Virus record (IMG/VR): IMGVR_UViG_3300028840_005860
Location: 166,070-230,069 of that record
Length of the DNA stretch: 64,000 nt
Reading direction: 5' to 3' (one strand)
Below, piece by piece: positions 12,425-49,625 of this stretch (positions are counted from its first letter, which is position 1; each line of letters starts with the position of its first letter). The position numbers were made by a program, and so were the translations under genes. The notes beneath the pieces were generated by a model, which was not told the DNA's origin, did no database searches, and worked only from the letters and a program-made list of their open reading frames with translations.

Positions 12425-12427
12425 GAA

Positions 12428-18572: not shown

Positions 18573-18598
18573 GAGGGGCCCTCGGGCCATCCCGAACC

Positions 18599-35390: not shown

Positions 35391-35393
35391 ACG

Positions 35394-35654: not shown

Positions 35655-35655
35655 G

Positions 35656-36184: not shown

Positions 36185-39100
36185 ATGGCAGCGGAAGGCA
36201 GCAAGAACGCAATCGCGGGATCGGCGTCCCCGTCCTCACAGAGGAAGAACGAGGACGAGCGCGTCGTGGCGGACGTCCCGAACACCCGGCCCGAGCTGCA
36301 CATCGGCAAACCCACCCGCGTCGTCGTCGGATCTATGAGATCGAGGGGCGGCCCTACCAGCTTCCGCGCGAGGGTGGCGAGCTGCGGGCCGGGCACCGGC
36401 AGCTACGGCGGCGTCAGTGCCGGAGGCGGCGGCACCGGCTACGGAGGGTACGGAGGCTTCGGAGGGAACTTCGGAGCCGGAGCCGTCATGCAGGCGAGCT
36501 CCGGAAACTTCTACTCCCCCGAGCTGAGCACCGACTTCCTTGAGCTTCCCCAGTCGCTCAACGAGCAGTGGAACTACTACAGGTTCTTCTACGACAACGA
36601 ACCGTTCGTCGGGCAGGCGCTCGACCTGCACACCGAGCTGCCGCTGTCCAAGGTCCGGCTCGGGCGCCCGAAGGCCAACGACAGGCGGATGGCCGAGGCG
36701 TCTCTGCGGTTCTGCGAGAAGTGGGTGAAGCGCATCGGGCTGCTCCAGCGTCTGCTCGAGATCGTCCACGACTACTTCAAGATCGGAGAGGTCTACATCT
36801 TCTGCGAGGACGCCAACCCGGAGATCCCACAGGACGTCCGGAAGAAGGTCGTGAGGCGCGTCGAGGCGGACGGCACGCTGACGGAGACGTGGGTCGACCG
36901 CGAGGACGCGAACGAGCGCACCGTCAGGTGGATGAAGCAGCACTACAAGGGGTGGACCAGCATCAGGACCGTCCCGCCCGAGCAGATCCACCTCCAGACG
37001 TTCCCGTTCACCGACGAGGTGTTGATCGATCTGATCCCCGACTCGAAGAGCAGGCACCTGCTCGACATGGCCGACCAGGGCGACAAGTACGCCGCGCGCG
37101 TCGTCAAGTCCATGGATCCGGTCGTGGTGGAGGCCCTTCGCAGGGGAGAAAACGTCCCGCTCAGCACCGACCCGGACGGCGGCTCCTTCGTCCACTACAT
37201 GGCGAACAAGAAGTCGCAGTACGAGCCGAGGGGCCACAGCATCCTCCAGCGGTGCCTTCTTCCCGGCACGCTCATAACCGTCCAGCGCAACGGGATCGTG
37301 CGGCAGGTCCCCGTGGAGGACGTCGACACGACTACGGATCTCCTGTTGACCCACAAGGGTCGGTTCCGTCGGGCCACGGCAGGTTCTCGCCCGGTGCGCG
37401 AGAGGGTCGCGGTCCTGCGCATCGAAGGCGTCGAAGACCCCTTGGCCCTCACCACTGACCACGAGGTGCTCCTCGTGCGGGAAGACGGCACCGAGGCGTG
37501 GGTGCCCGCGGGCGAAGTGCGCGAGGGCGACATCGTGCGCGAGAGTCACGTTGTCCCGGAGAACGAGCCCGTCCCTGAGATCGACCTCGCGACGTGGTGG
37601 AGTAATCGGAGGCTCAACGTTGCGCGACGTTTCCGTGAAAACGCGAAGGAAGTCGAAATCCGCAACCGTGAGGTTCGCGTCATCGACGTCGAGGATGGTC
37701 CCGATGGGCTCACCGTCACCTTCGAGCACGACAACGACGACGCGGGTCAGATCGAGGCGACTGAGGGGATGCGTCGGTTCGTGGCATGGCTCAAGAACCT
37801 GGACGCGCCCACGGAGGCCACCTATGACGAGATCGCGGCCGTCACCGGAGTCGACAAGTCGAAACTCAGGAACTACGCGCACCTCCTCCGAAGGGAAGCG
37901 GATCTGCGCACCGAGAGTCGGAGCCTTGGACGGGGTCGAGGTCGTCGCACGACCTGGTGGCCCCTCTCTGGCGACGCGGTCGTCCCGCGAGAGACCCGCT
38001 GCGTCACGATGACGTCCCCCGTCGCCCGGATCGAGGTGGACGAGGGATTCTGTTACCTGCTCGGCACGTGGGTCGGAAACGGCAACATCTGGACCTCGGA
38101 CGAGTTGGTCCTCAATTCTCATTCCGTCGCTTGGACCGCGGGCACCGGCGACCTGGAGCAGGAAATCAAGGCAGAGGAGATGAGGCTCGCCAGTGCCTCC
38201 TTCGGCGACCAGTGCTCGGACGGCCACCTGTTTGGAGAGGAGTCCGGCTCCGACGCGTTCAGGATTGAGGATCCGCTCCTGGCGCGGTGGTTTATGGATG
38301 AGTTCGGGCACTCGGCCCAGAGCAAGCGGATCCCGAGGTGGCTCTTCGACCTCGACGAGGCTCGCGTGTTGGCGTTCCTGCGGGGACTGCTCGACACGGA
38401 CGGGAATCTCCAGGAGAGGACGACACAGACGACCATCAGGTTTGAGATGGATAACCGCGTCCTCCTCGACCAGGTGCATCTCCTCTGCAACAGGCTCGGG
38501 ATAAAGACCCAGGTCAGGAACTATGTGAAACCCGCGCGGTCGTGGACGCGGCGCTGGAAGACCAAGAGGGGTTGGAAAGAGAAGAGTTACCATTACGATG
38601 CCAAGGCGTACGCGACTCTCACGGCGACGCGCCACGCTGACGTGCGTCGTTGGGCCGAGGGGTCCGTCAAGGGATCGAAGGTCGAGTGGCAGGACAAGAC
38701 GCACCCGAACGCCCTGCGTACACAGTTCGTGAACGGATGGCTCACGCGGAGGGTCGAAGGCACCGGTTTGGTGCCATACGAAGGACTCGTGTTCTCGTTC
38801 GATGTCGAGGGAGACGAGTCTCACGTAACACATCAAATGGTGACCCATAACTGCTTGAGAACATTAGTATTTTTTGATAAGTTGAGACAGGCCCAGACCA
38901 GCATCGCCTCCCGGCACATGACGCCGATCCGGCTCGTCTACGCCGAGGACATGGACGAGGAGAACACCGAGGCCCTCCGCGACCAGATCGACCTCGCCCT
39001 CCAGGACCCGGACTACACCATCGTCACCAACTTCCAGGTGACGTGGGAGGAGATGAACTCGAACGGGCGCCTCCTCGAACTCTCGAGCGAGTACGACCTC

Positions 39101-39634
39101 ATCGCGCGGCAGCTCTACGCGGGGCTCGGCGTCACCGAGACCCTCCTGAACGGAGAGTCGAGCTACAGCGGCGACCGCATCAACCTCGAGGTCATCAACA
39201 CGCGCTACATGCTGCTCCGCGAGAACGTCCAGCGCCTCGTCGAGGAGTACTTCTTCAAGCCCATGTGTCGTCGGATGGGCTTCGTCGAGGAGGACGAGGA
39301 CGGCCAGCTCGAAGTGATCTACCCGCGCCTGAGCTTCACGCGGCTCGCCCTGCGCGACAACCAGGACACCTTCGACGCGCTGTTCAACCTCTACCAGAAG
39401 GGGAGCCTCGACATAGAGACGATCCTCGACCTGCTCAACATCGACCCGGTGGTCGTCCGTGAGAGGCTCGAGGCCGACTTCGGGACCTTCAACGACTCGC
39501 AGTTCAACGAGGTCCTGCGCTCCGCCTACGGGCGCGTCGGCGACCAGCTCGTCGAGGGGTCCGACATCGTTCAGAAGATCGCCGACGTCCTGGGCGTGGA
39601 CTACAAGAAGCCCGAGGAACCCGGACGGTTCTAG
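36185..39634 (+). CDS. Portal protein, intein-containing
   Basis: Downstream of TerL; about 616 aa after intein removal; RFFY..EPFVGQALD, G.SILQR and PIRLV portal-like segments. Confidence 0.8.
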   Translation: MAAEGSKNAIAGSASPSSQRKNEDERVVADVPNTRPELHIGKPTRVVVGSMRSRGGPTSFRARVASCGPGTGSYGGVSAGGGGTGYGGYGGFGGNFGAGAVMQASSGNFYSPELSTDFLELPQSLNEQWNYYRFFYDNEPFVGQALDLHTELPLSKVRLGRPKANDRRMAEASLRFCEKWVKRIGLLQRLLEIVHDYFKIGEVYIFCEDANPEIPQDVRKKVVRRVEADGTLTETWVDREDANERTVRWMKQHYKGWTSIRTVPPEQIHLQTFPFTDEVLIDLIPDSKSRHLLDMADQGDKYAARVVKSMDPVVVEALRRGENVPLSTDPDGGSFVHYMANKKSQYEPRGHSILQRCLLPGTLITVQRNGIVRQVPVEDVDTTTDLLLTHKGRFRRATAGSRPVRERVAVLRIEGVEDPLALTTDHEVLLVREDGTEAWVPAGEVREGDIVRESHVVPENEPVPEIDLATWWSNRRLNVARRFRENAKEVEIRNREVRVIDVEDGPDGLTVTFEHDNDDAGQIEATEGMRRFVAWLKNLDAPTEATYDEIAAVTGVDKSKLRNYAHLLRREADLRTESRSLGRGRGRRTTWWPLSGDAVVPRETRCVTMTSPVARIEVDEGFCYLLGTWVGNGNIWTSDELVLNSHSVAWTAGTGDLEQEIKAEEMRLASASFGDQCSDGHLFGEESGSDAFRIEDPLLARWFMDEFGHSAQSKRIPRWLFDLDEARVLAFLRGLLDTDGNLQERTTQTTIRFEMDNRVLLDQVHLLCNRLGIKTQVRNYVKPARSWTRRWKTKRGWKEKSYHYDAKAYATLTATRHADVRRWAEGSVKGSKVEWQDKTHPNALRTQFVNGWLTRRVEGTGLVPYEGLVFSFDVEGDESHVTHQMVTHNCLRTLVFFDKLRQAQTSIASRHMTPIRLVYAEDMDEENTEALRDQIDLALQDPDYTIVTNFQVTWEEMNSNGRLLELSSEYDLIARQLYAGLGVTETLLNGESSYSGDRINLEVINTRYMLLRENVQRLVEEYFFKPMCRRMGFVEEDEDGQLEVIYPRLSFTRLALRDNQDTFDALFNLYQKGSLDIETILDLLNIDPVVVRERLEADFGTFNDSQFNEVLRSAYGRVGDQLVEGSDIVQKIADVLGVDYKKPEEPGRF
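37253..38851 (+). mobile_element. Intein with LAGLIDADG endonuclease and extra HTH-like insertion (533 aa)
   Basis: R|CLLPGTLITV...LTTDHEV...LGTWVGNG...FLRGLLDTDG...MVTHN|C. Confidence 0.93.
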
Positions 39635-39675: not shown

Positions 39676-42240
39676 GTGCCCTCGCTCATCCCCGACAATT
39701 TCACGAAGGAGACGCCTCCCGAGCCGGTGCGTCAGCTCGCGGAGGCGTGGCTTCGCGCGAGGCTTCGGGGTGCCGAGCCCGACTTCCTCGACGTGGCGGA
39801 CGGGGCGGTGATCGGCGTCTACCGGCTGCCCTGCGGCCTCGTCAGGCGGGCGAGCCACAGCTTCTCGCGGTGCATGGCGAAGGGCTGCCAGAAGCCGCCC
39901 GAGGTGGAGTGCCTCTGGGCCGAGGGTCGCGGCCGTGCCTGGCACTGTCAGAAGCACCACGACGCCTGGGTGAAGGAGGACGGTCCGGACGGGCGCGACA
40001 TCATCAAGCAGCAGAAGATTCCCGACGGCGTCGTGGGCGAGAAGTACGGCGAGTATCCGGCGAAGAAGACGGCCGGGGACGGCGACGAGTTCAAGAAGGG
40101 CGACAGGATCGTCTACGGCCCGCTCGTGCCGCCCGGCCCCAGGTACCTGCCGGGGATCGTCGTGAAACCGCAGGCCCCCTCGAGCCTCGACAACCCCGTG
40201 ACGATCAGGGTGAAGGGAGAGGGCACGTTCGAGACCGACCCCGACAGCGTGACTCCGCTGTCCCGGTGGAAGCGAAACCCGGATCTCGGCAAGACGGCCA
40301 AGGCGACAGGCAAGAAGACCGGCGTCGGCGAGCACGTCGGGCTGTTCATCCCGCTTCCGAAGGATCTAGCCAAGAAGTTCCCGTCGCTCGGCGAGGACGA
40401 CCCGTCCCCGTCCCACGTGACCTTCCTCTACATCGGCGACTGCAAGGGCAAGCGCGACCAGAAGGTCCTGGTCGACACGCTCCGGGACGCCTGTCGGCGC
40501 TGGTGGCCCGGCGCCAAGGCCACGCTCGGGGGCCTCGAGTACTTCACCCACGAAGACAAGGATCGTCGCGTCCCCCACGTCTCCGTGGACTTCGACAAGG
40601 ACCTGTCGGGTTTCAAGCACCGCATCAGGCAGGAGCTCGAGGAGAACGGCGTCGAAGTCGAGGACAGCTGGCCCGACTTCAAACCCCACGTGACGCTCGG
40701 ATACCTACCGGGTACGGACTCCGAGTGGAAGGGCAAGGTTCCGAAGGGTTCCTGGAGTTTCGACGAGATGGAGGTCTGGGGTCTCCCGAAGGTCCACAAG
40801 CTCAAGCTCGGTCCCTCCATCTACAAGATCTCCGACACGTGGCTCCGCGGGAGGTTGCACCGCTACGTTGCCGCGCGCTACCTCGTTCGCAAGATCGCCG
40901 GATGGTGGGCCATCAGGCCGGGCAGTCCGGGAATCAACTGCCCGCCCGTGGACAAGGGCGGCCTCATGAATGCCATCCCCGGCACGGACCCGCCGGACGC
41001 CCGCTACAACGGGGACGGCCCGGCCGACATCATGGACGCCGCGCTCGCGGACGTCGACATGGAGTACCTGATGGAGTGGGGGCGCCCCGCGACCAAGCAG
41101 GAGCTCCAGGCGGTGTTCGACTTCTGCACTGGGGCCCTCCGCGAGGACGGTTCGAGGGACTACGGCAAGCACGAGCACGTGAATCAGTGGTTCGTCGAGT
41201 TCGCGGAATGGCTTGGCAAGAGGCCGAATGAGATCCGGTTCTTTCAGGGCGACAGCGACATCGTGGACGCCCTCCGGCAGAACTGGGACGGTACGGGCGA
41301 GTCCCTGGACGCCTACAAGAAGGAGATCCTGGACCTCGTCGACAAGACCAAGAAGTTCGAGGGCGGTCTCGAGGCCAAGGACCTGGCAGAGCGTCTGAAG
41401 GCCAGAACCCAGGTGATCCACGACGAGACCTTCCGGGGCGAGGACTGCCTGGAGGGGGGAGAAGATCCCGAGATCGTCATAAAGCGGGTAGCATCGAGGT
41501 ACATGGCCTCGATCCCGCACGGCAAGAACGTCGCCCTGATGAAGTGGCTCTCGGACGTGACCAGGCGCCTGGGCGTCGCCCGGGACACCTACGTCGTCGG
41601 GGGTGCGGTCAGGAACTTCCTCATCGGTCGGCCCATCAAGGATCTCGACGTGGTGATCGACTCGGTTCGGGCCGGACGCGACTCCGCGTGGCTGGCGGCT
41701 CAGATCTCCCGGCACGTGCCCGCTCCGACGAACGTCACGACGAACCAGTACGGCGTCGCCATCCTGACGATCAAGGGGAGCTGGGTCCTCGACGGCGAGG
41801 ACATGCGAGGCGAGGTGATCGAGATCGCCAACGCCCGCAAGGAGAGCTACGCGGAGGGACTCGGGAAGGGGCACAAACCCCATACGGTTGCCCCGGCCAC
41901 CATCGAGGAGGACGTCAGGCGTCGAGACTTTACGATGAACGCGCTTCTCTGGCGTCTGATGGACCTGGCGCACGGGCCCGAGAAGGCCGAGGTGATCGAC
42001 CTCACCGGCTGCGGCCGGCGCGACCTTGAGCAGGGGGTCCTGCGGTGCCCGCAGCCGCCCGACAAGGTGTTCTCTGACGATCCGACGAGGATGCTGCGTC
42101 TTGTTCGACTCGCCTCCAAGTACAATCTGAAAATCCCACCTGATGTGGCTGCCTCAGTACGCCGGAATGCAAGCAAACTGAAGAGAATGCCTTGGGAGGC
42201 GGTCGCGACGATCCTCATGCAGACACTGGAGGGCAGGTAA
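39676..42240 (+). CDS. Multidomain protein: Zn-finger-like, SH3-like, 2H phosphoesterase, and N-terminal part of a CCA-adding-type nucleotidyltransferase
   Basis: Two HxT motifs (SHVTF, PHVTL); YVVGGAVRN...KDLDVV, ARKESY, EEDVRRRDFTMNA, FSDDPTRMLR. Confidence 0.88.
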   Translation: MPSLIPDNFTKETPPEPVRQLAEAWLRARLRGAEPDFLDVADGAVIGVYRLPCGLVRRASHSFSRCMAKGCQKPPEVECLWAEGRGRAWHCQKHHDAWVKEDGPDGRDIIKQQKIPDGVVGEKYGEYPAKKTAGDGDEFKKGDRIVYGPLVPPGPRYLPGIVVKPQAPSSLDNPVTIRVKGEGTFETDPDSVTPLSRWKRNPDLGKTAKATGKKTGVGEHVGLFIPLPKDLAKKFPSLGEDDPSPSHVTFLYIGDCKGKRDQKVLVDTLRDACRRWWPGAKATLGGLEYFTHEDKDRRVPHVSVDFDKDLSGFKHRIRQELEENGVEVEDSWPDFKPHVTLGYLPGTDSEWKGKVPKGSWSFDEMEVWGLPKVHKLKLGPSIYKISDTWLRGRLHRYVAARYLVRKIAGWWAIRPGSPGINCPPVDKGGLMNAIPGTDPPDARYNGDGPADIMDAALADVDMEYLMEWGRPATKQELQAVFDFCTGALREDGSRDYGKHEHVNQWFVEFAEWLGKRPNEIRFFQGDSDIVDALRQNWDGTGESLDAYKKEILDLVDKTKKFEGGLEAKDLAERLKARTQVIHDETFRGEDCLEGGEDPEIVIKRVASRYMASIPHGKNVALMKWLSDVTRRLGVARDTYVVGGAVRNFLIGRPIKDLDVVIDSVRAGRDSAWLAAQISRHVPAPTNVTTNQYGVAILTIKGSWVLDGEDMRGEVIEIANARKESYAEGLGKGHKPHTVAPATIEEDVRRRDFTMNALLWRLMDLAHGPEKAEVIDLTGCGRRDLEQGVLRCPQPPDKVFSDDPTRMLRLVRLASKYNLKIPPDVAASVRRNASKLKRMPWEAVATILMQTLEGR

Positions 42241-42242
42241 TC

Positions 42243-43070
42243 GTGGCCGGAAGACCTTGGACGGAAGGAGAGGAGAGGCTTCTTCGCCACTTATGGAAGT
42301 CCGACCTCACGCGGGAGGAGGTCGCGGCACGGTTGCTAGGACGAACGCCGGTCGCCATACAGGTGAGGGCAAAGCGTCTTGGTCTTCGCCATACGGATGA
42401 GCAGTTCCGCCGGATCCTTTCGAAGAAAAGCAAGGGGGAGAACAATGGGATGTTCGGACGTGAGGGGCCGCGCAGAGGTGTAGTGCTCACTGTTACCCAG
42501 CGAGATCTTCTCAGAAAGAAGGCGCTCAACTCCTACAAGAATGGGCGACCCAAGATGGTCGGTGCTCGAAACCCGATGTTTGGTAAGCCGGGCACGATGC
42601 GCGGCAAGAAGTTGCCACCGTCGGCCAAGGCCACCCTCTCCGAGAAAGCCAAAGTCCGTTGGTGTCAGGCATCGGACGAGGAAAAGGCCAAGAAAGTCGC
42701 TCAGCTTCGTGAGGGTCGCGAGCGTCTCGGACGTGACAGCCCCTCATCGATCGAGGTGGCGATGAGGGAATGGTTGTCAGACTTGCAAACTGACTTTGAA
42801 GCACAGGTCGTGATTGGGTTCTACACCGTCGATTTCCTTGTATCGGAGAACAAGGTCATCGAGTGTCACGGCGACTATTGGCACGCGCACCCTGAGAAGT
42901 ACGCGAGCGGCGACCTTGATGAGACGCAACGGCATAATGTTCACCGAGACCGCCGCAAGGCCACTTTTCTCCGAAATCGGGGTTATGGGCTGCTTGTGAT
43001 GTGGGAGAGTGACATCAAGGAGCGTCCTTCGTGGTGCGTCTCGCAAGTGGAGGATTTTCTTCATGGGTGA
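42243..43070 (+). mobile_element. Free-standing homing endonuclease (HTH + NUMOD3 + Vsr/DUF559-like nuclease)
   Basis: WTEGEE..L...GRT..AI..RA..LGL; GENNGMFG and GARNPMFG; SSIE...YTVDF...IECHGDYWH; lower GC; own RBS. Confidence 0.85.
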
Positions 43071-43503
43071 TCCCAGGAAGGCTCTTCAGCAGATGAAGCA
43101 GCTCGGGCTGCTCGAGGTGGTCTCCGAGATGATCAGGTCGAGCAAGCCCTTCTCCGCCTACATGGCGAACCAGCTGCGGACGAACAGGAGGGTCCCCCTC
43201 CTCCTCGACCTCATGGACATGGGGGTCCCCGCGACCACGCCCCTCTCGTTCCTCGACCGCGCGGGACAGCAGCGCGTCCGCGAGGTCACGATGCCGATGA
43301 CAGAGCGCGAGGCCGCGGACTTCGTGAACCTCCTGATCAAGCCGCCCGTGGACAACAGGCGGATCATCGAGGAGCTCGGGCTCCCAGGTCCCGAGCGGCG
43401 CCTCATCCTGCCGATGGCGCGCGACCTGATCCTCAAGAACCCCCCTCTCGCGGCCGACGGGCGCAGGCTGACCGAGGAGGTCCTCCGAGCATGGCCGCGC
43501 TAG
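43063..43503 (+). CDS. C-terminal part of the split CCA-adding enzyme
   Basis: MGDPRKALQQMKQLGLLE matches the helix that follows motif E in class II CCA enzymes; VDNRRIIEELGLPGPE tail motif; GGAGG RBS inside the endonuclease gene. Confidence 0.75.
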   Translation: MGDPRKALQQMKQLGLLEVVSEMIRSSKPFSAYMANQLRTNRRVPLLLDLMDMGVPATTPLSFLDRAGQQRVREVTMPMTEREAADFVNLLIKPPVDNRRIIEELGLPGPERRLILPMARDLILKNPPLAADGRRLTEEVLRAWPR

Positions 43504-46500
43504 CACAGCTGGCCCTCCGCGTCGCCGCGAGGCACCTCGCAGCCGACGCCTACTTCGAGGTCGGCGAGGAGGTGCTGTACGGCAAGTTCAAGAACCGTCG
43601 CGGTCGGGTCGTCAGGATCTTCGACGACGAGCGCGGCGTCCCCTCCGTGGAGATTGAGCCGATCCCGAAGGGCCGCAGGCAGAACAGGATGGTGGGCCTC
43701 TACGGGATCTGGAAGCTGCCCGAGGCGCGGAAGACCGCAGCGATGGACCGCGAGGCCTGCATCATCGCGGGCCGCAAGTTCGGGGACGGCCTGTGCCTCA
43801 TGAAGACCCGCGACCGGGCCTACGATCCGAAGCTCCAGGTGCTCCACGTCGAGCGGGACGGCACCGAGATGGCCGTGGTGTTCGACAAGACCACGGGCTA
43901 CCTGGAGGGCGTCAACGAGCACGGCATCGGCATCGTCAACACGACGCTCATGGTCGTCCGGGACGAGCAGGAGGGCGTCAAGAAGACCAAGGGCGACAAG
44001 CAGAAGGGGCCCAAGAGGTCCAAGGACGGTCCCAAGATCTTCAAGGCGCTCGAGGCCGAGACCCTCGACGACGCCATCCGCTCCCTCGTCTCCTTCCGCG
44101 GCGGCATCAAGGGTCACACGTTCGTGGCGGACGGCGAGCGCATGGTCTGCATCGAGCGCAGCGGCAGGCATCCGGCCAAGATCCACCGCCTCGACCCGAC
44201 GCGCGTGAACACGCGCACCAACCACGGAGTCGCCTACCCCGACGCCGGCTACACCCACGGGGACGACTACGTGTCGTCCATCGTGCGGCGCTGGGAGGCC
44301 CAGAAGCGCCTCCAGAACGTGAACAATCCCGAGGTCGTGGCCCCGGCCCTGGTCCAGGCGATCCACGAGGCCGACAGCCCGTTCAACCCGGTCCGCTGCA
44401 CCGACAAGATGCGGACCACGAGCCAGCTCACCATCGACACGACGAACCCGACGCTCTACCTGTACGTCATCCCCGGGCACGCCGACCTCTCCCCCCCGCG
44501 CAACGTCCTCCCCGACGGCCGACGCCCCAAGATCCCCGTGCGGACCTTCCGCTACCGGCAGAGGATGGAGGACCGCACGGAGCAGCCGGGCCGGAAGACC
44601 GCGCGGGAGGTGCTCGCGCGCTACAAGTCGAAGAAGAAGGTCAGGTCCGAGGACGGCGACGAGACGACCGTCTACGAGTACTCCGAGCGCCAGGTCCAGC
44701 ACCGCAACCGCGAGAAGGCCGAGCGCATCGAGAGGCTCCGTGGATCGATAGGCAAACTCCGCGCGCAGCTCGAGAAGGACATCAGATCCGACGACCCCAA
44801 GAAGCGCGACGTCGCGGCCGCCGTGGGCCTCATGGATCACACGTACGAGCGTCCCGGCAACGACGAGTCGGCGTCCGACGGCCACTATGGCGTGACCAAC
44901 TGGAAGGTGCGGCACGTCAGGTTCGGCGACGGCCAGGCCAAGATCAGCTACGTCGGCAAGTCGGGCGTCAGGCAGCAGAAGTCCGTCACGGACCGAGACC
45001 TCGTGAAGGCGCTCAGGGCCGCCTGCGCCGACAAGGGCGCCGAAGCGACCTGCCTGGACGTGAGCGCCGACGAGGTCAACGAGTACCTCAGGCCCTTCGG
45101 CGTCACGGCGAAGGACCTGCGAGGGCTGCACGCCAACGGGGAGATGAAGGACCGGCTCAGGCGCGTGCGCCGGGAGGGCGGCCCGCTGCCCGAGGACCCG
45201 GAGAAGCGCGAGGAGAAGCTCAGGAAGGAGTTCGACAGGGCCCTGGACGAGGCCGCGGAGACGGTGGGCCACGAGCCTTCGACCCTCAAGAGCCAGTACC
45301 TCGTGCCCGGCCTGGAGGAAGACTACAAGAGGGACGGCACCGTGAGCGAGAGCCACGCCAAGAAGGCGGCCGAGGCCGTGACCGACACGGCGTCCTTCTA
45401 CGTGATCGCGCCCGAGGCGCTCAGGGGCATGCTCGACGACACCGACTGGCTCGAGCTCGCTCACGACCTATGGCCTGGAGAAGGGCGCCCGGGCGGCGAC
45501 GCCGAGGTGCTCGTGCCCGAGATGGAACGCCAGGTCCGCGAGAGCGGTGGCGCCGTGCTCGACACCGGATGGGACGGCGGCTTCGACGTCGGCGTGAGGG
45601 GCAAGTACGACGAGCTGGGCCGGATCGAGCCCTTCGACCTGCCCGTTCGCGAGAAGGGCGCGGTGCCTCCCTACGGGTTGCGCAAGAGCGCGTCGCTGCT
45701 GCGCGTCGCCGCCGAGGAGGGGACCTCGGCCGAGCGCAGGATCCTCGCCAACGCCCTGGTGGCCCCCGTGCTCGTGGCCCGGACGCGCGAGTGGTGGCTC
45801 CGCGAGGCGCCCCACCTGTACCGGATTGCTCGCGATCACGAGAAGCCTCGACCTCGCATCGAGGGCCTCGAGTTTCCGTCCAATCTTTTCACGATCCTAT
45901 GGTACGAAGACGCGGACGGGAACGACCTGGGAGACGGGGACCTTGAAGGAGAGCCGGGCGCGCCAGAAGGAGCACAGTACCAGCACAGCCAGTTCCCGCA
46001 CGTCCTGCACCACAACGTCCTGCGCCTCAACGACGACGGAACCTCCACGGACCTCGGCGGCGGCGAGGCGTCCTACCCGGAAGACCTCGTGAACGCGATG
46101 GTTCGCAGCGGGGACTGGGACGTGGGCGACGCGATCATGGTCGCCGCCCAGTCGTGCGAGCGGTGCCTGAACGTCCTGTGCCACCATTACGACCTGGACG
46201 ACGGCTACCCGTTCGGGTCCGAGGAGTACTGGAGCGCTGGCACCCGTTGTCCGATGTGCGAGAACGTGCATGCTCCCGCTCGCACGGCCGCGACGCCGAA
46301 CTACGAGGCGTACGTCGAGCGCAAGAGGCGGGAGGGAGAACCCCCGCTCGACCGCGAGCGGTGGGAGCGCAGGGTCCTGGGCGTGCGCGACGAAGAGGGT
46401 CCGCGCGACTGGGACGCGCACCGCAGAGACGTGATGCGGCGTCACGAGCTGGACAAGCTGCACGCGCCCTACGATCCCGAGAACAAGCACCTGCGCATCG

Positions 46501-49500
46501 ACCTGATCAGCGTCCGAAGGGACGCGCGCGGAGAGGGTCACGCCCGACGGGCGATGGAGGAGATCCTCGGATGGGCGGACCGGGCCGGAGCGACCGTCAC
46601 GCTGACGCCGACCTCCGAGTTCGGCGCGTCCAAGAAGCGCCTGACGCGGTGGTACGAGGGCATGGGGTTCGTCCCGAACAAGGGCAGGAACAAGGATTTT
46701 CGGTTTCAGGACGCGATGATCCGCGCCCCCCAAGTCAAGACCGCCACGAAGTCCGACGCCGAGCTCGACGAAGAGGCGGTCGAGGAGATGCTCCGCGAGG
46801 AGCCCAAGAAGAAGCCGCCTCGCTACGATCTGCGGGACAACCGACCCTTGGAGGACGACGACGAGGAGGACCTCGAGGGCCTCGGCGGCGGGGACCGGGG
46901 CGACCGGGACCTGAGCCTCAAGTGGAACAAGGTCGGCAGGCGCGTGGCGTTTCGCTGGCTGGCGACTCCCGGAAGGCTCTCGGCGGTCAGGACCGCCATG
47001 CGTCATCGGGCGAAGGTCACGCCCGACTCCGAGTTCCAGAAGGAGATCGCGGACAAGAAGTTCAGGCACCCGGAGACGGGCAACGAGGTCGCGTTCGGCT
47101 CCCTGCCGACCGAGGAACAGCACCGGATTTTCGAGGAGTGGAAGAAGAAGCACGCGCCGAAGGGGGAACCGGCCGAGGGCAAAGAGAAACCCAAGGAGGA
47201 GCCCGAGGGTCGGTCGCCCGAGGAGATCGACCAGGACATCTCCGAGGCCCGCGAGGCGGCCAAGAAGTTGAAGGGCGAGATCCGCGACCTGAAGGAGAAG
47301 ATTGGCGACGCGAAGAAGGCCATCGAGGACTGGACCGAGCTCACGAAGGGAGAGGTCGGCGAGGAGATGAGGAAGAAGGGCGACGCCGTCATCAAGGAGA
47401 TGAAGCGCATCGTCCTGGATGCCGAGGACGACATCGAGTACAAGACCCAGGACCTCAAGGACGCGCGCAGACGCGTCCAGGAGCTGAAGGAGGAGCGCGA
47501 GGACCCGACCGGAGCTAAGGCGAAGAAGGAGCAGGAGGAGAGGGAGCAGAAGGAGAAGCGGACGCGGCAGGCCGTCAAGGACACGGTCGCGGCGATGGAG
47601 AAGATGCTCGGCAGGGGGTCGAGGCTGCCGCAGGGGACGAGGCAGGAGATCGAGAGTGCGCTGGGCGACTTCGACTACCCCCAGCTCGAGGCGTTCGCGC
47701 TGGCGTTTCAGGGCGAGCTCAAGGACCTCAGCGGACAGGACCCGACGTCGCCCGACGTGATCTCCATGGCGAACCGGCAGGCGAAGATCGGCTTCGACGT
47801 GGAGGGTGTCACGGATCCCGAGGAGCTGGCGAGGCGTGCCGCGGAGGTCGGCTACGTGACGAACGTGGTCGCCAACCCGATGGTCGTGGGAGGCAGGCCC
47901 GTCGGGCAGACGGAGATGGACGACGCGGCACGGTCGGCGCGGGCGAGGGAGGCGTTCGCCCAGTTCGAGAATCTCCACCCGAAGCTGCAGCGCATGGCGG
48001 CGGAGCGCATCCGCGAGGAGCTAAGGGGCCTCGACGAGGACACCGACCGCGCCGTGGAGCTCGAGTCGATCCTCAGCGCCGTCGACCTGGCGCACGTGGG
48101 CCAGACCGGAGAGGCCCTCCCCGGACGCCCGCAGCCGAGCGCCGGCAACGCCGCGCTGATCAAGCGCATGATCGCGGACGGCAACGCCGACAGGATGTTC
48201 CAGACGAAGAAGGACTTCTTCTCGGAGGGATCGCGGGAGGCGATGGCGCAGGCGCTCGAGGAGATGGACGACGCCGACGTGGCCAATTTCATCACGGGCG
48301 ACGACCCGAGCCACCCGTTCTACGAGCTCTCCCAGAGCATGAGGACCGAGGGCGCGGGCGAGTTCAACCAGATGATCAAGGACTTCCTGATCAAGGACTT
48401 CCTGAACGACACGTGGGGCGACCGGGCCGCGCGCGACGTGATGGAGGCCGCGGGCGTCGAGGACTGGGACAGCCCGGAGGCGCGGGCCGAGCTGCTCGAG
48501 GAGTCCAAGCGAGCCGGCGAGACGCCCCTGGGTCAGGTGCTGGAGGCGAAGGAGCGTGTCGAGGCGGCGCGGGCCGCGGGCGAGGAACCCAGCCAGGACG
48601 ACCTGGACCTCGTGAGTTCGTACTTCGAGCCCGAGGCCGGCGAGGGGGTCGTCGGCAATGCCAGGGCCCTCCTCGGCCTCCTGAGGGACAAGTTCAAGAA
48701 GCACGTGATCTCGCCCGCCGTGGCCGTGCTCAACCACTTCGTGAAGACGCGGGATCCGAAGGTACTCAGCCAGGAGACGTTGCCGCACCCGGACGAGAGA
48801 TCCCCTGAGCCGAGACCCAAGGAGGAGCGCGAGAAGGCGCGGGTCGAGATGCCCACCGAGGCAGAGGCGCCCGAGAGCAAGCCTGGTAAGCCCGAGGTCG
48901 TGGCTCCCGAGTGGGCCGCGGAAGGACGCAAACCGGCCGAGGACCTGACCCCTGAGAAGGCGATGCGCAGGCGCATCGTCCTGAAGAGCGAGCGCCAGAA
49001 GCTAGAGGCCCAGCGAGAGAAGGCGCCGCCCGAGGAGCGCGGCAAGTACGACGTCAAGATCAGGAAGCTGGACAAGGAACTCGAGAGAGCCAGCGTTCCG
49101 AAGAGACCGGAGAAGAAGGCCCCTGAGCCGGAGAAGAAGGCCCCTGAGCCGGAGAAGGTGAAGGAGCCTGAGGTGGTGCGGAAGCGTCGCAAGCAGCTCG
49201 AGAAGGTGAAGTCCGTGCGCGACGAGGCCAGGGCGGCGCTGAAGGAGATGGAGCCCGCGGCCCGGAAACAGCTCGAACAGAAGCTCGAGAAGATGGACGC
49301 CGCCATCAGGCAGGTCGAGGAGCAGCACGCCGAGGACGAGAAGCACGGCCCCGGGGACGTCTGGAAGACCAAGGGAGGAAACTGGCGCGCCAAGAACGAG
49401 GAGGGTCTCTCCAGGAGTTTCAAGAAGAGGGACGAGGCCGAGACGTACGCGAGAGGGGAGCCCGAAAAGGAGTGGAGCGCCGAGTTCAAGGCAGTCTCGC

Positions 49501-49625
49501 CCGAGGAGGCCTGGCGCGGGCCGACGCGCTTCGCGGGGAACGTGACCGACGCGTGGCTCGCCCGCATCCGAAGCATCCATCCCGACGATCCCGACCGCCC
49601 CGTCATCGTGCTCGACGCGGCCTGA
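43491..49625 (+). CDS. 2044-aa polyprotein-like head protein: SH3-like, Ntn hydrolase, DNA topoisomerase IB, GNAT, coiled-coil domains
   Basis: CIIAG...KTRD...EGVNEHG...RTNHG (Ntn); ERPGN, VGKSG, KDLRG, VGHEP..LKSQY (Topo IB R-K-R-H-Y); ISVRRDARGEGHARRAM...WYEGMGF (GNAT). Confidence 0.85.
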   Translation: MAALAQLALRVAARHLAADAYFEVGEEVLYGKFKNRRGRVVRIFDDERGVPSVEIEPIPKGRRQNRMVGLYGIWKLPEARKTAAMDREACIIAGRKFGDGLCLMKTRDRAYDPKLQVLHVERDGTEMAVVFDKTTGYLEGVNEHGIGIVNTTLMVVRDEQEGVKKTKGDKQKGPKRSKDGPKIFKALEAETLDDAIRSLVSFRGGIKGHTFVADGERMVCIERSGRHPAKIHRLDPTRVNTRTNHGVAYPDAGYTHGDDYVSSIVRRWEAQKRLQNVNNPEVVAPALVQAIHEADSPFNPVRCTDKMRTTSQLTIDTTNPTLYLYVIPGHADLSPPRNVLPDGRRPKIPVRTFRYRQRMEDRTEQPGRKTAREVLARYKSKKKVRSEDGDETTVYEYSERQVQHRNREKAERIERLRGSIGKLRAQLEKDIRSDDPKKRDVAAAVGLMDHTYERPGNDESASDGHYGVTNWKVRHVRFGDGQAKISYVGKSGVRQQKSVTDRDLVKALRAACADKGAEATCLDVSADEVNEYLRPFGVTAKDLRGLHANGEMKDRLRRVRREGGPLPEDPEKREEKLRKEFDRALDEAAETVGHEPSTLKSQYLVPGLEEDYKRDGTVSESHAKKAAEAVTDTASFYVIAPEALRGMLDDTDWLELAHDLWPGEGRPGGDAEVLVPEMERQVRESGGAVLDTGWDGGFDVGVRGKYDELGRIEPFDLPVREKGAVPPYGLRKSASLLRVAAEEGTSAERRILANALVAPVLVARTREWWLREAPHLYRIARDHEKPRPRIEGLEFPSNLFTILWYEDADGNDLGDGDLEGEPGAPEGAQYQHSQFPHVLHHNVLRLNDDGTSTDLGGGEASYPEDLVNAMVRSGDWDVGDAIMVAAQSCERCLNVLCHHYDLDDGYPFGSEEYWSAGTRCPMCENVHAPARTAATPNYEAYVERKRREGEPPLDRERWERRVLGVRDEEGPRDWDAHRRDVMRRHELDKLHAPYDPENKHLRIDLISVRRDARGEGHARRAMEEILGWADRAGATVTLTPTSEFGASKKRLTRWYEGMGFVPNKGRNKDFRFQDAMIRAPQVKTATKSDAELDEEAVEEMLREEPKKKPPRYDLRDNRPLEDDDEEDLEGLGGGDRGDRDLSLKWNKVGRRVAFRWLATPGRLSAVRTAMRHRAKVTPDSEFQKEIADKKFRHPETGNEVAFGSLPTEEQHRIFEEWKKKHAPKGEPAEGKEKPKEEPEGRSPEEIDQDISEAREAAKKLKGEIRDLKEKIGDAKKAIEDWTELTKGEVGEEMRKKGDAVIKEMKRIVLDAEDDIEYKTQDLKDARRRVQELKEEREDPTGAKAKKEQEEREQKEKRTRQAVKDTVAAMEKMLGRGSRLPQGTRQEIESALGDFDYPQLEAFALAFQGELKDLSGQDPTSPDVISMANRQAKIGFDVEGVTDPEELARRAAEVGYVTNVVANPMVVGGRPVGQTEMDDAARSARAREAFAQFENLHPKLQRMAAERIREELRGLDEDTDRAVELESILSAVDLAHVGQTGEALPGRPQPSAGNAALIKRMIADGNADRMFQTKKDFFSEGSREAMAQALEEMDDADVANFITGDDPSHPFYELSQSMRTEGAGEFNQMIKDFLIKDFLNDTWGDRAARDVMEAAGVEDWDSPEARAELLEESKRAGETPLGQVLEAKERVEAARAAGEEPSQDDLDLVSSYFEPEAGEGVVGNARALLGLLRDKFKKHVISPAVAVLNHFVKTRDPKVLSQETLPHPDERSPEPRPKEEREKARVEMPTEAEAPESKPGKPEVVAPEWAAEGRKPAEDLTPEKAMRRRIVLKSERQKLEAQREKAPPEERGKYDVKIRKLDKELERASVPKRPEKKAPEPEKKAPEPEKVKEPEVVRKRRKQLEKVKSVRDEARAALKEMEPAARKQLEQKLEKMDAAIRQVEEQHAEDEKHGPGDVWKTKGGNWRAKNEEGLSRSFKKRDEAETYARGEPEKEWSAEFKAVSPEEAWRGPTRFAGNVTDAWLARIRSIHPDDPDRPVIVLDAA

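What the first reader, a model, noticed from the sequence alone, without database searches (positions are those of the whole stretch)
43491..49625. 2044-aa protein chaining Ntn hydrolase, topoisomerase IB and GNAT in the head operon
Seen: SH3-like domain, Ntn-hydrolase domain starting at Cys90 (43758), Topo IB with a full R-K-R-H-Y pentad (about 44620-45360), two unknown domains, GNAT (about 46440-46730) and long charged helical regions. Known: Ntn hydrolases need the catalytic Cys to become the N-terminus; poxviruses package Topo IB in the virion to aid early transcription. Here the Cys directly follows R-E-A, so cleavage at the proposed motif would activate the enzyme. Inference: an ejected toolkit that relaxes incoming DNA and modifies host targets by acetylation and amide hydrolysis.
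Basis: partly seen in the sequence, partly recalled or inferred. Interest (0 to 1): 0.8.

Follow-up and report, generated by a model that had tools for sequence, protein, structure and literature searches.

The report
Phage head-module multi-enzyme protein with topoisomerase IB
This is a real 2044-residue "Swiss-army-knife" protein of an uncultured jumbo phage, encoded beside the portal gene, that joins an intact type IB topoisomerase to a self-activating-type amidase and a small acetyltransferase. It belongs to a very large, essentially undescribed phage family in which the topoisomerase is the constant core and the other enzymes are swapped.

Summary
ORF 43491-49625 (+) is one 2044-aa gene.

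**Domains confirmed**
- **Topo IB (aa 370-630):** passes Pfam. R454, K490, R544, H594 and Y603 align residue for residue with the variola topoisomerase catalytic pentad and are invariant in 178 of 178 relatives.
- **Ntn module (aa 90-362):** models as a Cys-Ntn hydrolase nearest to isopenicillin-N acyltransferase. Cys90 is invariant.
- **GNAT (aa ~960-1082):** a mini-GNAT with an intact CoA loop.
- **aa 20-80:** a Tudor/KOW-like SH3 barrel.
- **Unassigned:** two further domains, one with a C4 zinc ribbon, and the conserved C-terminal half.

**Family and context**
- Relatives number in the hundreds of clusters and are almost exclusively viral. Many sit on 200-536 kb contigs.
- The Topo gene (234-2837 aa) lies between terminase/portal and capsid genes.
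- Around the constant Topo core, modules are swapped. They include Ntn, GNAT, NUDIX, ART, gamma-glutamyl cyclotransferases, carbonic anhydrase and especially RNA-repair enzymes.

**Interpretation**
- It is best read as a Topo-IB-cored polyvalent protein that is packaged and ejected with the DNA. Packaging is inferred, not shown.
- Ntn activation is more likely autocatalytic than done by the head protease.
- The kind is known; this variant is new.

The parts
43491..49625 (+). Whole gene: 2044-aa Topo-IB-cored polyvalent protein
   Evidence: ORF list and translation; 57 homologues, more than 20 collinear over most of the length; held by three independent sequencing runs with even depth
43491..43742 (+). 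Module A (aa 1-84): low-confidence N-terminal helix plus a five-stranded Tudor/KOW-like SH3 barrel (aa ~20-80)
   Evidence: AF2 strands 27-75 with pLDDT 82-87; Tudor domains 6if4 and 6hq9, TM 0.72 normalised to the target; weak KOW hit. In relatives it often directly precedes the Topo domain
43758..44576 (+). Module B (aa 90-362): Cys-Ntn hydrolase/acyltransferase of the AAT (C45)-choloylglycine hydrolase type. Cys90 (43758-43760) is the predicted nucleophile and self-cleavage point
   Evidence: Foldseek 2x1c E=1e-7, also 3gvz, BSH, PVA, C69, proteasome; PF03417 in 19/37 relatives; C90 invariant together with K105, R107, D108, R109, Y111, N142, N150, N244, R266, R302; first core strand starts at residue 91
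44598..45380 (+). Module C (aa 370-630): type IB topoisomerase catalytic domain; R454, K490, R544, H594, Y603
   Evidence: PF01028 E=1e-24; PDB 6z01, 2f4q, 2h7f; pentad invariant in 178/178 relatives
45396..45656 (+). Module D (aa 636-722): optional cassette, fold unknown, low model confidence
   Evidence: Present in 11 relatives and cleanly absent in e.g. P0004; pLDDT mostly below 70; no family match
45657..46280 (+). Module E (aa 723-930): alpha/beta domain ending in a C4 zinc ribbon (C889, C892, C920, C923); function unknown
   Evidence: pLDDT 85-95; four Cys invariant in 24/24; present in 26 relatives; no Pfam, PDB or Atlas assignment
46368..46736 (+). Module F (aa ~960-1082): mini-GNAT acetyltransferase cassette; CoA loop R1013-x-x-G1016-x-A1018 and Y1055
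   Evidence: PF00583 21.8 bits; fold matches Naa50, GCN5, AtaT and AcrVA5 (TM 0.63 normalised to the target); viral mini-GNATs; motif residues invariant in 16/16; clean insertion relative to P0011 and others; shared with DarB-like, LPD and ART-PolyVal giant proteins
46737..47180 (+). Module G (aa 1083-1230): the second most conserved element. A disordered linear motif P-K-K-K-P-P-R-Y-D-L-R (1105-1115) ... D-L-S-L-K-W-N-K (1140-1147), followed by a small beta-beta-alpha unit (~1190-1225)
   Evidence: Present in 71 relatives; near-invariant columns. It lies at the N-terminus of the separate 572-aa protein that follows the small Topo gene in L006
47208..48860 (+). Module H (aa 1240-1790): long, largely helical conserved scaffold; the first part is very charged
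   Evidence: Conserved in 42-44 relatives; composition. In 9/24 relatives the G-H-J stretch (A5) hits tape-measure PHROGs, but the query does not
48861..49322 (+). Module I (aa 1791-1944): variable, low-complexity Pro/Glu/Lys-rich linker
   Evidence: Only 3 relatives align here; 52% charged and 13% Pro
49323..49622 (+). Module J (aa 1945-2044): conserved C-terminal domain (motif G-P-G-D-V-W...G-N-W)
   Evidence: Present in 28 relatives; a related motif directly follows G in distant relatives
39676..42240 (+). Upstream partner gene: 854-aa 2H phosphoesterase plus PolyA_pol/CCA-type nucleotidyltransferase (RNA repair). It is fused into the Topo protein in many relatives
   Evidence: Pfam and PHROGs. 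The same domains lie inside the Topo ORF in 22 of 84 loci and just upstream in 14; 13/20 large relatives carry PolyA_pol
36185..39634 (+). Portal gene interrupted by a LAGLIDADG intein; anchors the head module
   Evidence: PHROG portal E=4e-25 and LAGLIDADG_3; the two extein halves are 70% and 89% identical to the uninterrupted portal of L001
52063..54843 (+). Downstream head gene with an intein; weak prohead-protease similarity. It is a candidate processing enzyme
   Evidence: phrog_18299 E=1.7e-5, Hint/LAGLIDADG; intein-free 528-537 aa versions exist in relatives
57248..58126 (+). Capsid-like gene that closes the conserved head block
   Evidence: 97% identical to the L001 gene that carries a weak Phage_capsid_4 hit; found downstream of the Topo gene in 38 of 84 loci

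Best explanation
The gene encodes a polyvalent (multi-effector) protein of the head module of an uncultured marine/sediment jumbo phage (contig 237 kb).

Shown here:
- It is one continuous gene.
- It holds a catalytically intact type IB topoisomerase domain, a Cys-Ntn hydrolase/acyltransferase fold with an invariant nucleophile, and a mini-GNAT with an intact CoA loop. It also holds a Tudor/KOW-like barrel, a zinc-ribbon domain and a conserved non-enzymatic C-terminal half (G-H-J).
- Across hundreds of phage relatives the Topo domain is the constant and best-conserved part. The gene sits between terminase/portal and capsid genes.
- The other enzymes are exchangeable cassettes inserted at fixed junctions.

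Inferred mechanism:
1. The protein is made late, together with head proteins.
2. It is taken into the procapsid through its conserved G-H-J half and leaves the capsid with the DNA at the next infection.
3. The Topo IB needs neither ATP nor Mg2+. It serves as an immediate swivel on the entering genome, which is torsionally constrained while one end is still in the capsid and is being transcribed. This parallels the virion topoisomerase of poxviruses.
4. The Ntn module activates itself by cleaving the A89|C90 bond, which also detaches the N-terminal barrel. It then acts as an amidase or acyl-transferase on an unknown substrate.
5. The mini-GNAT acetylates a host (defence) protein, as AcrVA5 does.
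6. The neighbouring 2H/CCA-type enzyme is fused to the Topo protein in many relatives. It repairs RNA damaged by host nucleases.
For: - **One gene, not a fusion artefact.** More than 20 independent metagenome proteins are collinear with it. Three runs hold it with equal depth on both sides of the only contig break.
- **Topo.** PF01028 E=1e-24. The pentad aligns to variola R130/K167/R223/H265/Y274 and is invariant in 178/178. Median identity of 56% is second only to module E (61% in 26 relatives) and holds across 178 relatives.
- **Ntn.** Fold match to IAT at E=1e-7, AAT profile in 19/37 relatives, invariant Cys90 with A or G at -1, and relatives that start M-K-K-E-A-C.
- **GNAT.**
- **Polyvalent class.** The GNAT cassette is shared with giant proteins that carry LPD22/23/37/39, ART-PolyVal and SNF2 domains. 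It is also shared with the 3695-aa DarB-like protein in the structural block of phage Skulduggery. Relatives carry NUDIX, GGACT/AIG2/ChaC, ART-PolyVal, InPase, carbonic anhydrase, RNA ligase, HAD_SAK_1 and PolyA_pol.
- **Head-module position.** A portal homologue lies within 10 kb in 53 of 84 loci. Capsid-block genes lie downstream in 38-50 of them.
- **Viral family.** 134 IMG/VR relatives against 4 MAG contigs among 185,579 species genomes.
- **Concept.** Packaged and injected polyvalent proteins, with autoproteolytic release of their domains, are described in PMC5512222.
Against: - There is no direct evidence that the protein is in virions. No cultured close relative exists and no virion proteome is available.
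- No MuF or other known capsid-targeting domain was found.
- About 15 of the 84 loci carry only a ~350-aa Topo between terminase and portal, without effector cassettes. This fits a role in packaging at least as well as a role after ejection.
- The substrates of the Ntn and GNAT modules are unknown.
- Pfam support for AAT is below threshold for the query itself.
- The usual N-terminal DNA-binding domain of pox/bacterial Topo IB is not detectable by sequence.
Confidence: 0.58

Rival explanations
1. Packaging helper, not an ejected effector. The Topo IB works in the producing cell. It removes torsional stress or untangles the replicating concatemer while the terminase-portal motor fills a very large head. 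The fused enzymes simply share late expression.
For: The Topo gene always lies among terminase, portal and capsid genes. In about 15 of 84 loci a ~350-aa Topo without cassettes sits directly between the terminase-like gene and the portal. In L006 a 344-aa barrel-plus-Topo gene directly follows the portal. The Topo domain is the universally conserved part. Contigs are often 200-536 kb.
Against: Fusion to domains typical of injected polyvalent proteins, namely the mini-GNAT shared with DarB-like virion-block proteins and ART-PolyVal and InPase in relatives, is hard to explain for a packaging factor. A large conserved non-enzymatic half (G-H-J) suggests a structural or targeting role. No known phage packaging system uses a Topo IB (own knowledge; literature searches found none).
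Confidence: 0.22
2. Tape-measure-like or ejectosome structural protein. The long helical C-terminal half forms part of a tail or trans-envelope conduit. The enzymes are accessory decorations, as in some mycobacteriophage tape measures.
For: The G-H-J halves of 9 of 24 relatives hit the tape-measure family phrog_167 (best E=1.5e-8), and 6 hit phrog_1535. There are long charged helices.
Against: The query itself has no tape-measure hit. The gene lies between portal and capsid genes, not in a tail module, in every locus examined. The hits may reflect coiled-coil composition. An ejectosome role would in any case be a sub-case of 'packaged and ejected'.
Confidence: 0.08
3. The prohead protease cuts after R-E-A and thereby creates the N-terminal Cys that switches on the Ntn enzyme during head maturation.
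For: A candidate prohead protease gene lies 2.4 kb downstream. The sequence before Cys90 is conserved as [KR]-x-[AG]. Head proteases do process internal proteins in T4 and phiKZ-like phages (own knowledge).
Against: A small residue at -1 with an invariant Cys is the signature of autocatalytic Ntn precursors. Relatives with only a 5-residue leader (M-K-K-E-A-C), and a stand-alone homologue in Chryseobacterium phage MA9V-1, keep the same junction without a head-protein context. T4/phiKZ-type proteases cut after Glu (own knowledge), which would leave Ala-Cys rather than Cys. R-E-A is not enriched.
Confidence: 0.1
4. Assembly chimera: two genes of related phages joined at a shared sequence.
For: Logan contigs of all three runs break at 45267-45298. 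This is a 31-mer in the Topo active-site codons that is also present in a co-occurring relative.
Against: The depths of the two flanks track each other in three runs (21 and 20.6; 19.7 and 18.9; about 5-7 and 6). The competing contig has depths of 13.6, 12.7 and 21.3. The same order of modules is found in more than 20 independent assemblies. The identical protein is on record from two contigs.
Confidence: 0.02

Closest known systems
Polyvalent proteins of phages and conjugative elements (Iyer, Burroughs, Anand, de Souza, Aravind 2017, PMC5512222), e.g. P1 DarB, N4 vRNAP-type giants, Skulduggery gp28
   Same: One very large polypeptide strings together unrelated enzymatic effector domains. Architecture varies greatly among relatives. 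The gene is encoded with virion genes. The same mini-GNAT cassette is shared, and relatives carry ART-PolyVal, InPase, 2H and LPD-bearing partners. An embedded self-cleaving domain could release parts, as that paper proposes for its MPTase peptidase domains.
   Different: That survey never mentions a type IB topoisomerase or an Ntn hydrolase. Here Topo IB is the invariant core. No MuF, DarA, LPD or MPTase domain was found in this protein. The conserved G-H-J half has no named counterpart.
Poxvirus virion type IB topoisomerase (vaccinia/variola; PDB 2h7f, 1a41)
   Same: The same catalytic domain and pentad, aligned residue for residue. It is a virus-encoded enzyme made late.
   Different: Sequence similarity is distant (phmmer E=1.4e-6 over ~215 residues; percent identity not computed). 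The pox N-terminal DNA-binding domain is not detectable, apart from its last strand. A Tudor/KOW-like barrel stands in its place. Here it is separated from the catalytic domain by an inserted Ntn module, and the whole is embedded in a 2044-aa protein. Packaging is not shown here.
Acyl-CoA:isopenicillin N acyltransferase / peptidase C45 and the choloylglycine hydrolase (C59) Cys-Ntn hydrolases (PDB 2x1c, 3gvz, 6ufy, 2iwm)
   Same: An alpha-beta-beta-alpha Ntn fold, an invariant Cys at the start of the first core strand, a small residue before it, and conserved Arg/Asp/Asn residues nearby.
   Different: Only 15-17% identity. There is no sequence-level PDB match. The module is embedded inside a multidomain protein, so activation would cut the host polypeptide. 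The substrate is unknown.
AcrVA5 and other phage mini-GNATs
   Same: A GNAT core of about 100 residues with the CoA loop; TM 0.63 (normalised to the target) to AcrVA5 and 0.6-0.76 to stand-alone phage acetyltransferases. AcrVA5 inactivates a defence nuclease by acetylation (own knowledge).
   Different: No sequence-level relation to AcrVA5 was shown. Here it is a cassette within a giant protein, and the target is unknown.
PF01028-bearing genes noted in marine jumbo phages of cluster PGC_D (Weinheimer and Aylward 2022, PMC9123017)
   Same: The same Pfam domain, recorded as a distinctive gene of a group of marine jumbo phages. The window also comes from sediment and seawater samples.
   Different: That paper only lists the Pfam hit. 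It gives no architecture, head-module context or function. Whether this window's phage belongs to that cluster was not tested.

Membership tests
Type IB topoisomerase (PF01028) | Profile match above the curated threshold | tested here: met
   87.7 bits against a cut-off of 23.7, E=1e-24; profile against PDB gives 6z01 1e-18, 2f4q 1e-17, 2h7f 1.5e-16
Type IB topoisomerase (PF01028) | Catalytic pentad Arg-Lys-Arg-His-Tyr in register | tested here: met
   R454, K490, R544, H594, Y603 align with variola R130, K167, R223, H265, Y274; invariant in 178/178 relatives
Type IB topoisomerase (PF01028) | N-terminal DNA-binding domain of the small (pox/bacterial) enzymes | tested here: inconclusive
   Profile matches start at variola residue 64 and D. 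radiodurans residue 76. In relatives a Tudor/KOW-like barrel sits directly before the catalytic domain, but equivalence was not tested by structure
Type IB topoisomerase (PF01028) | ATP-independent relaxation through a 3'-phosphotyrosyl intermediate | not testable with these tools
   Needs a relaxation assay with a Y603F control
Cys-Ntn hydrolase (AAT/C45 - choloylglycine hydrolase superfamily) | Four-layer alpha-beta-beta-alpha fold | tested here: met
   AF2 core pLDDT above 90; Foldseek 2x1c E=1e-7, 3gvz, 3hbc, 6ufy, 2iwm, 5img and proteasome subunits
Cys-Ntn hydrolase (AAT/C45 - choloylglycine hydrolase superfamily) | Nucleophile at the first residue of the first core strand, invariant, preceded by a small residue | tested here: met
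   C90 invariant in 37 sequences; A or G at -1 in 28/30; strand 91-97 follows a disordered linker at 81-87. Residue-level superposition on Cys103 of IAT was not available
Cys-Ntn hydrolase (AAT/C45 - choloylglycine hydrolase superfamily) | Family profile above the curated threshold | tested here: inconclusive
   Query 22.2 bits against 23.2. 19/37 relatives match at E<=0.01, best 6.9e-9. No PDB hit by sequence profile
Cys-Ntn hydrolase (AAT/C45 - choloylglycine hydrolase superfamily) | Autocatalytic cleavage that exposes the nucleophile | not testable with these tools
   Needs intact-mass or N-terminal sequencing of recombinant aa 1-365 and a C90A mutant
GNAT acetyltransferase | GNAT fold | tested here: met
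   All top 50 PDB matches are GNATs, probability 0.96-1.0; viral GNATs down to E=2.7e-8. Only about 100 residues, the C-terminal core, are matched (mini-GNAT)
GNAT acetyltransferase | Acetyl-CoA pyrophosphate-binding loop (R/Q-x-x-G-x-G/A) | tested here: met
   R1013-G-E-G1016-H-A1018. R, G and A/G are invariant in 16/16, and Y1055 is invariant
GNAT acetyltransferase | Profile above the curated threshold | tested here: met
   PF00583 gives 21.8 bits against 20.7 for the 605-aa piece. It gives 20.4 when the whole protein is scanned. 14 relatives match
Polyvalent proteins (PMC5512222) | Several unrelated catalytic domains in one phage or plasmid polypeptide, with strongly variable architecture among relatives | tested here: met
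   Three enzymes plus at least five other modules; clean cassette gains and losses; relatives carry NUDIX, GGACT, ART, InPase, RNA-repair domains and carbonic anhydrase
Polyvalent proteins (PMC5512222) | Shares domains with recognised polyvalent proteins | tested here: met
   The GNAT cassette is 33-43% identical to segments of proteins with LPD22/23/37/39, ART-PolyVal and SNF2 and to DarB-like gp28 of Skulduggery
Polyvalent proteins (PMC5512222) | Encoded with virion or packaging genes | tested here: met
   Lies between the portal and the capsid block here and in 53 of 84 related loci
Polyvalent proteins (PMC5512222) | Physically packaged and delivered with the DNA | not testable with these tools
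   No cultured close relative. The distant Topo of the cultured Xanthomonas jumbo phages has no virion proteome in the paper read
Polyvalent proteins (PMC5512222) | Known head-targeting module (MuF/SPP1 gp7-like) | tested here: not met
   No such Pfam or PHROG hit for the query or for 24 G-H-J halves. This is not a required feature of the class
Tail tape measure protein | Family profile match and a position in the tail module | tested here: not met
   The query has no tape-measure hit. 9/24 relatives hit phrog_167. The gene lies in the head module

The most novel reading that the evidence does not exclude
The packaged Topo IB may act not, or not only, as a free swivel. It could form a covalent 3'-phosphotyrosyl link near the leading end of the packaged genome, the same suicide-substrate chemistry that TOPO cloning exploits. 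This would tether the whole effector chain to the DNA so that it is drawn into the cell with it. It would cap the end against exonucleases such as RecBCD and could later rejoin ends. That would be a new kind of phage terminal protein. It would also explain why the Topo domain is the one invariant part of an otherwise freely shuffled protein and why it always sits beside terminase and portal.
Probability: 0.1. Interest if true: 0.85.

Novelty: new variant of a known kind. Interest (0 to 1): 0.62.

Why it matters
Virion-borne topoisomerase IB is a textbook feature of poxviruses. A bacteriophage counterpart has not been described in the literature I could search. The only trace found is a Pfam hit listed for marine jumbo phages.

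Here the enzyme turns out to be the fixed core of a very large phage protein family. At least 623 clusters at 50% identity have E<=1e-30, and there are 134 IMG/VR loci. Defence-related and RNA-repair enzymes are shuffled around that core.

If the protein is packaged, this gives three things:
1. a testable answer to how very long phage genomes deal with torsional stress at entry;
2. a catalogue of candidate counter-defence enzymes that travel with the DNA (Ntn amidase, mini-GNAT, NUDIX, gamma-glutamyl cyclotransferases, carbonic anhydrase, CCA-adding/2H/ligase RNA repair);
3. a self-cleaving Ntn module as a possible built-in release switch in giant proteins.

If the protein is not packaged, a Topo IB dedicated to head filling would itself be new.

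Tried and rejected
- **Megablast of the gene against 50,697 phage records:** no match.
- **Sequence profile of the Ntn family against PDB:** no hit even at E<=10, so the Ntn assignment rests on the fold and the Pfam AAT hits.
- **Profile of natural barrel-plus-Topo proteins against PDB:** run to see whether the barrel is the Topo N-terminal domain. The match starts only at variola residue 64, so the question is unresolved.
- **ESM Atlas for aa 1083-1800 and 723-935:** best scores 0.67 and 0.77, below the level at which shuffled sequences also score. The DarA_N, phi29 gp3 and L5 gp82 leads were discarded.
- **PDB and BFVD fold searches of the aa 636-1240 model:** dominated by the GNAT. Nothing was found for modules D, E or G.
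- **PADLOC:** no hit for this gene or the upstream gene.
- **Self-BLAST for internal repeats:** none.
- **R-E-A as a recurring cleavage motif:** 5 occurrences against roughly 2 expected. Rejected as evidence.
- **Idea that in L005 the missing barrel is encoded at the end of the upstream gene:** rejected, since no similarity was found. That protein really starts five residues before the Cys, at a GTG overlapping the upstream stop.
- **Short 'joints' reported by read laying** (sides of 21-22 letters): treated as stray matches from other organisms.
- **Promoter and terminator scan of the 200-nt gap after the gene:** nothing found.
- **Claim that the protein evolves much faster than its neighbours:** not upheld. 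Its 41-56% identity to the L001 orthologue lies within the 33-89% range of the other head genes. Only the capsid-like gene stands out, at 97%.

Full report

Yes. The + strand carries one ORF from the ATG at 43491 to the stop at 49625, 2044 codons. A GAGGAGG motif lies 10 nt upstream. In this 65% GC window long ORFs appear in several frames, so length alone proves nothing.

The protein has 57 homologues in a 5.8-billion-protein collection. More than 20 of them are collinear with it over almost the whole length. The identical sequence is on record from two contigs, the longer of 237 kb.

**2. Assembly check**

- Three public runs (two sediment, one seawater) hold 93-100% of the gene's sampled words.
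- Their contigs break at a single place, 45267-45298. This is a 31-mer within the codons of the Topo active site (aa 593-603) that a co-occurring relative also contains.
- The two flanks have matching depth in each run (21 and 20.6; 19.7 and 18.9; about 5-7 and 6). The competing contig differs, at 13.6, 12.7 and 21.3.
- With the collinear relatives, this makes a chimera very unlikely.

**3. The enzymatic modules**

Topo IB
- PF01028 gives E=1e-24, well above threshold.
- PDB sequence matches are the Topo IB entries 6z01 (deposited as 'DNA topoisomerase I'), 2f4q (putative type I topoisomerase; D. radiodurans by my own recollection) and 2h7f (variola, likewise).
- Counting along the printed alignment with variola topoisomerase, R130, K167, R223, H265 and Y274 fall on R454, K490, R544, H594 and Y603.
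- All five are invariant in the 178 relatives that have the domain.

Ntn module
- An AlphaFold model of aa 1-365, built on 37 sequences, has mean pLDDT 82, with the core above 90.
- Its best PDB matches are the precursor and mature forms of acyl-CoA:isopenicillin N acyltransferase (E=1e-7). Next come CV2077, bile-salt hydrolases, penicillin V acylase, C69 dipeptidase and proteasome subunits. All are Ntn folds.
- The Pfam AAT profile is just under threshold for the query, but it matches 19 of 37 relatives.
- Cys90 is invariant and sits immediately before the first core strand, after a disordered linker. It is accompanied by invariant K105, R107, D108, R109, Y111, N142, N150, N244, R266 and R302.

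GNAT
- The model of aa 636-1240 (pLDDT 74) finds only GNATs among the top PDB matches, including the minimal anti-CRISPR acetyltransferase AcrVA5. It also finds many phage mini-GNATs.
- PF00583 passes its cut-off when the piece is scanned.
- The CoA loop R1013-x-x-G1016-x-A1018 and Y1055 are invariant.

Residues 20-80 form a five-stranded barrel that matches Tudor domains.

**4. The rest of the protein**

BLAST against all collected relatives divides the protein into modules.

| Module | Residues | What is known |
|---|---|---|
| D | 636-722 | Optional, poorly modelled, unassigned |
| E | 723-930 | Confident alpha/beta domain ending in a C4 zinc ribbon; C889, C892, C920, C923 invariant; unassigned |
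| G | 1083-1230 | Near-invariant, apparently disordered motif P-K-K-K-P-P-R-Y-D-L-R ... D-L-S-L-K-W-N-K, then a small beta-beta-alpha unit |
| H | 1240-1790 | Long, conserved, mostly helical |
| I | 1791-1944 | Variable Pro/Glu/Lys-rich linker |
| J | 1945-2044 | Conserved C-terminal domain |

After the Topo domain (178 relatives), G is the most widely retained module, in 71 relatives.

**5. Modularity**

- The Topo domain occurs at any relative position in proteins of 318-3381 aa in the representative search. In IMG/VR loci the ORFs are 234-2837 aa.
- Cassettes come and go at clean junctions. The close relative P0011 goes directly from E to G and lacks the GNAT. P0004 lacks D. P0028 and P0029 lack the Ntn module, so the barrel abuts the Topo domain.
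- Ten natural proteins have the barrel directly in front of the Topo domain. In the window's protein the Ntn module therefore looks like an insertion between the two.
- In locus L006 the unit is split. A 344-aa barrel-plus-Topo gene follows the portal. It is followed by a 572-aa protein that starts with the G motif and continues with H- and J-like sequence.
- The giant protein therefore looks like a Topo gene fused to a G-H-J gene, with cassettes in between.

**6. What relatives carry instead**

- Precomputed and fresh Pfam scans show NUDIX, AIG2/GGACT and ChaC (gamma-glutamyl cyclotransferases), and DUF5661. They also show ART-PolyVal, InPase, a eukaryotic-type carbonic anhydrase and an intein.
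- RNA-repair enzymes are the most frequent: PolyA_pol/CCA-type nucleotidyltransferase in 13 of 20 large relatives, plus 2H phosphoesterase, RNA ligase, HAD_SAK_1 and tRNA-ligase CPD.
- In the window these RNA-repair domains are in the separate upstream gene 39676-42240.
- In 22 of 84 related loci they are inside the Topo ORF, and in 14 they lie just upstream. The two genes therefore belong together.

**7. Genomic context**

- The window's order is: terminase-like gene (33599-35659), portal with an intein (36185-39634), RNA-repair gene, a free-standing HNH/DUF559 gene, and the Topo protein.
- Seven head-block genes follow, ending with a capsid-like gene (57248-58126). This matches L001, L005, L007, L008 and the P0004 locus.
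- Among 84 loci fetched with a Topo profile, a portal homologue lies within 10 kb in 53 (38 upstream, 15 downstream). Head-block genes lie downstream in 38-50.
- Two layouts exist: terminase - portal - (RNA repair) - large Topo protein - capsid block, and terminase - small Topo (~350 aa) - portal.
- The family is viral. There are 134 IMG/VR relatives, many on contigs of 200-536 kb. Among 185,579 species genomes there are only four loci, all in MAGs.

**8. How it most likely works**

The class it fits is the polyvalent proteins of Iyer et al. 2017. These are giant phage or plasmid proteins that chain effectors, are encoded with virion genes, and are thought to be delivered with the DNA. Embedded peptidases may release the parts.

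The link is more than analogy. The mini-GNAT cassette is 33-43% identical to segments of proteins that carry LPD22/23/37/39, ART-PolyVal and SNF2 domains. It is also similar to the 3695-aa DarB-like protein in the structural block of Pseudomonas phage Skulduggery.

I therefore commit to the following model:
1. The protein is made late.
2. It is packaged through the conserved G-H-J half.
3. It is ejected with the DNA.
4. The cofactor-independent Topo IB acts at once as a swivel on the entering, torsionally trapped genome.
5. The Ntn and GNAT modules and the neighbouring RNA-repair enzyme act on host molecules.

Domain identity, conservation, modularity and synteny are shown. Packaging, ejection and targets are inferred.

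**9. The Ntn activation question**

An Ntn enzyme needs its nucleophile as the free N-terminus, so activation must cut A89|C90. Three observations point to self-cleavage rather than a head protease:
- the -1 residue is A or G in 28 of 30 relatives;
- five relatives begin M-K-[KR]-E-A-C, and one of these starts was verified on DNA as a GTG overlapping the upstream stop;
- a stand-alone homologue in Chryseobacterium phage MA9V-1 has a leader of about 12 residues.

In relatives where the module lies deep inside (positions 250-1232), it would split the giant protein. The Ntn module could thus double as a built-in release switch.

The closest solved relative is an acyl-CoA-dependent acyltransferase. 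Transfer rather than hydrolysis therefore remains possible.

**10. Rivals**

- **Packaging helper.** The strongest rival is that the Topo IB serves DNA packaging in the producing cell. The minimal ~350-aa versions wedged between terminase and portal carry no effectors.
- **Tape-measure-like role.** This is suggested only by PHROG hits of some relatives' G-H-J stretches. The gene's position contradicts it.
- **Chimera.** This is addressed in section 2.

**11. Novelty**

- The 2017 survey of polyvalent proteins mentions neither a type IB topoisomerase nor an Ntn hydrolase.
- Full-text searches for Topo IB together with phage, virion or jumbo phage found nothing relevant.
- A 2022 study lists PF01028 as a distinctive gene of one marine jumbo-phage cluster, without further analysis.
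- The kind (polyvalent protein) is known. A Topo-IB-cored, head-module family of this size is, as far as I can tell, a new variant. So are the Ntn cassette and the conserved G-H-J half.

The finding is solid, moderately surprising and directly testable.

Noticed in passing
window 36185-39634; 52063-54843; 42192-43070; 58293-61436: The head module is full of selfish elements. There is a LAGLIDADG intein in the portal and a Hint+LAGLIDADG intein in the protease-like gene. A free-standing HNH/DUF559 endonuclease gene lies between the RNA-repair gene and the Topo gene and is absent at that place in L001, L005 and the P0004 locus. A 1047-aa LAGLIDADG/methyltransferase-like gene follows the capsid gene.
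   Followed up: partly
window 57248-58126 compared with L001:23919-24797: The capsid-like protein is 97% identical to that of L001, whereas the neighbouring head proteins are only 33-89% identical. This points either to very strong constraint or to recent exchange of the capsid gene between these phages.
   Followed up: no
window 45267-45298: A 31-mer in the codons for the Topo active site (V-G-H-E-P-S-T-L-K-S-Q-Y) is shared with another phage in the same samples. It breaks the de Bruijn-graph contigs of three runs at exactly this point. It is a likely site of mis-joins in assemblies of this phage group.
   Followed up: partly
window 43009-43503: A 164-aa ORF overlaps both the end of the HNH gene and the start of the Topo gene. 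It has no family hit and no counterpart in L001. It is unclear whether it is a real gene.
   Followed up: partly
window 49626-49820: A non-coding gap of about 195 nt follows the giant gene. Relatives have a similar gap of about 300-340 nt at the same place (L001 16063-16406; L005 13343-13641). Simple promoter and terminator scans found nothing.
   Followed up: partly
window 4-19785: The left part of the window is a replication and nucleotide-metabolism block. It holds a ribonucleotide reductase large subunit, an exonuclease V/Dda-like helicase, a UvsX-like recombinase, an SbcC-like protein, a nucleotidyltransferase, a Cas4-like exonuclease and a sliding-clamp-like protein.
   Followed up: no
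L093 (Xanthomonas phage PhiXhv-16, record 191134-193140): Cultured 227-229 kb Xanthomonas/Erwinia jumbo phages encode a distant (27-29% identical) 668-aa Topo IB. It has the full pentad and a Lys/Pro/Glu-rich tail, and lies 2.7 kb upstream of a head-tail connector gene. This is a possible laboratory handle for testing whether phage Topo IB is packaged.
   Followed up: partly
L006:8001-10761: In a 117-kb contig the unit is split into a 344-aa barrel-plus-Topo gene and a 572-aa gene. The second gene begins with the G motif and carries H- and J-like sequence. This is either the ancestral state or a fission of the giant protein.
   Followed up: partly
P0044 / P0045 (relatives, not in the window): Two relatives carry a eukaryotic-type (alpha) carbonic anhydrase domain (PF00194, E=4e-34) together with an RNA ligase in the same Topo protein. 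This is an unexpected enzyme for a phage head-module protein.
   Followed up: no
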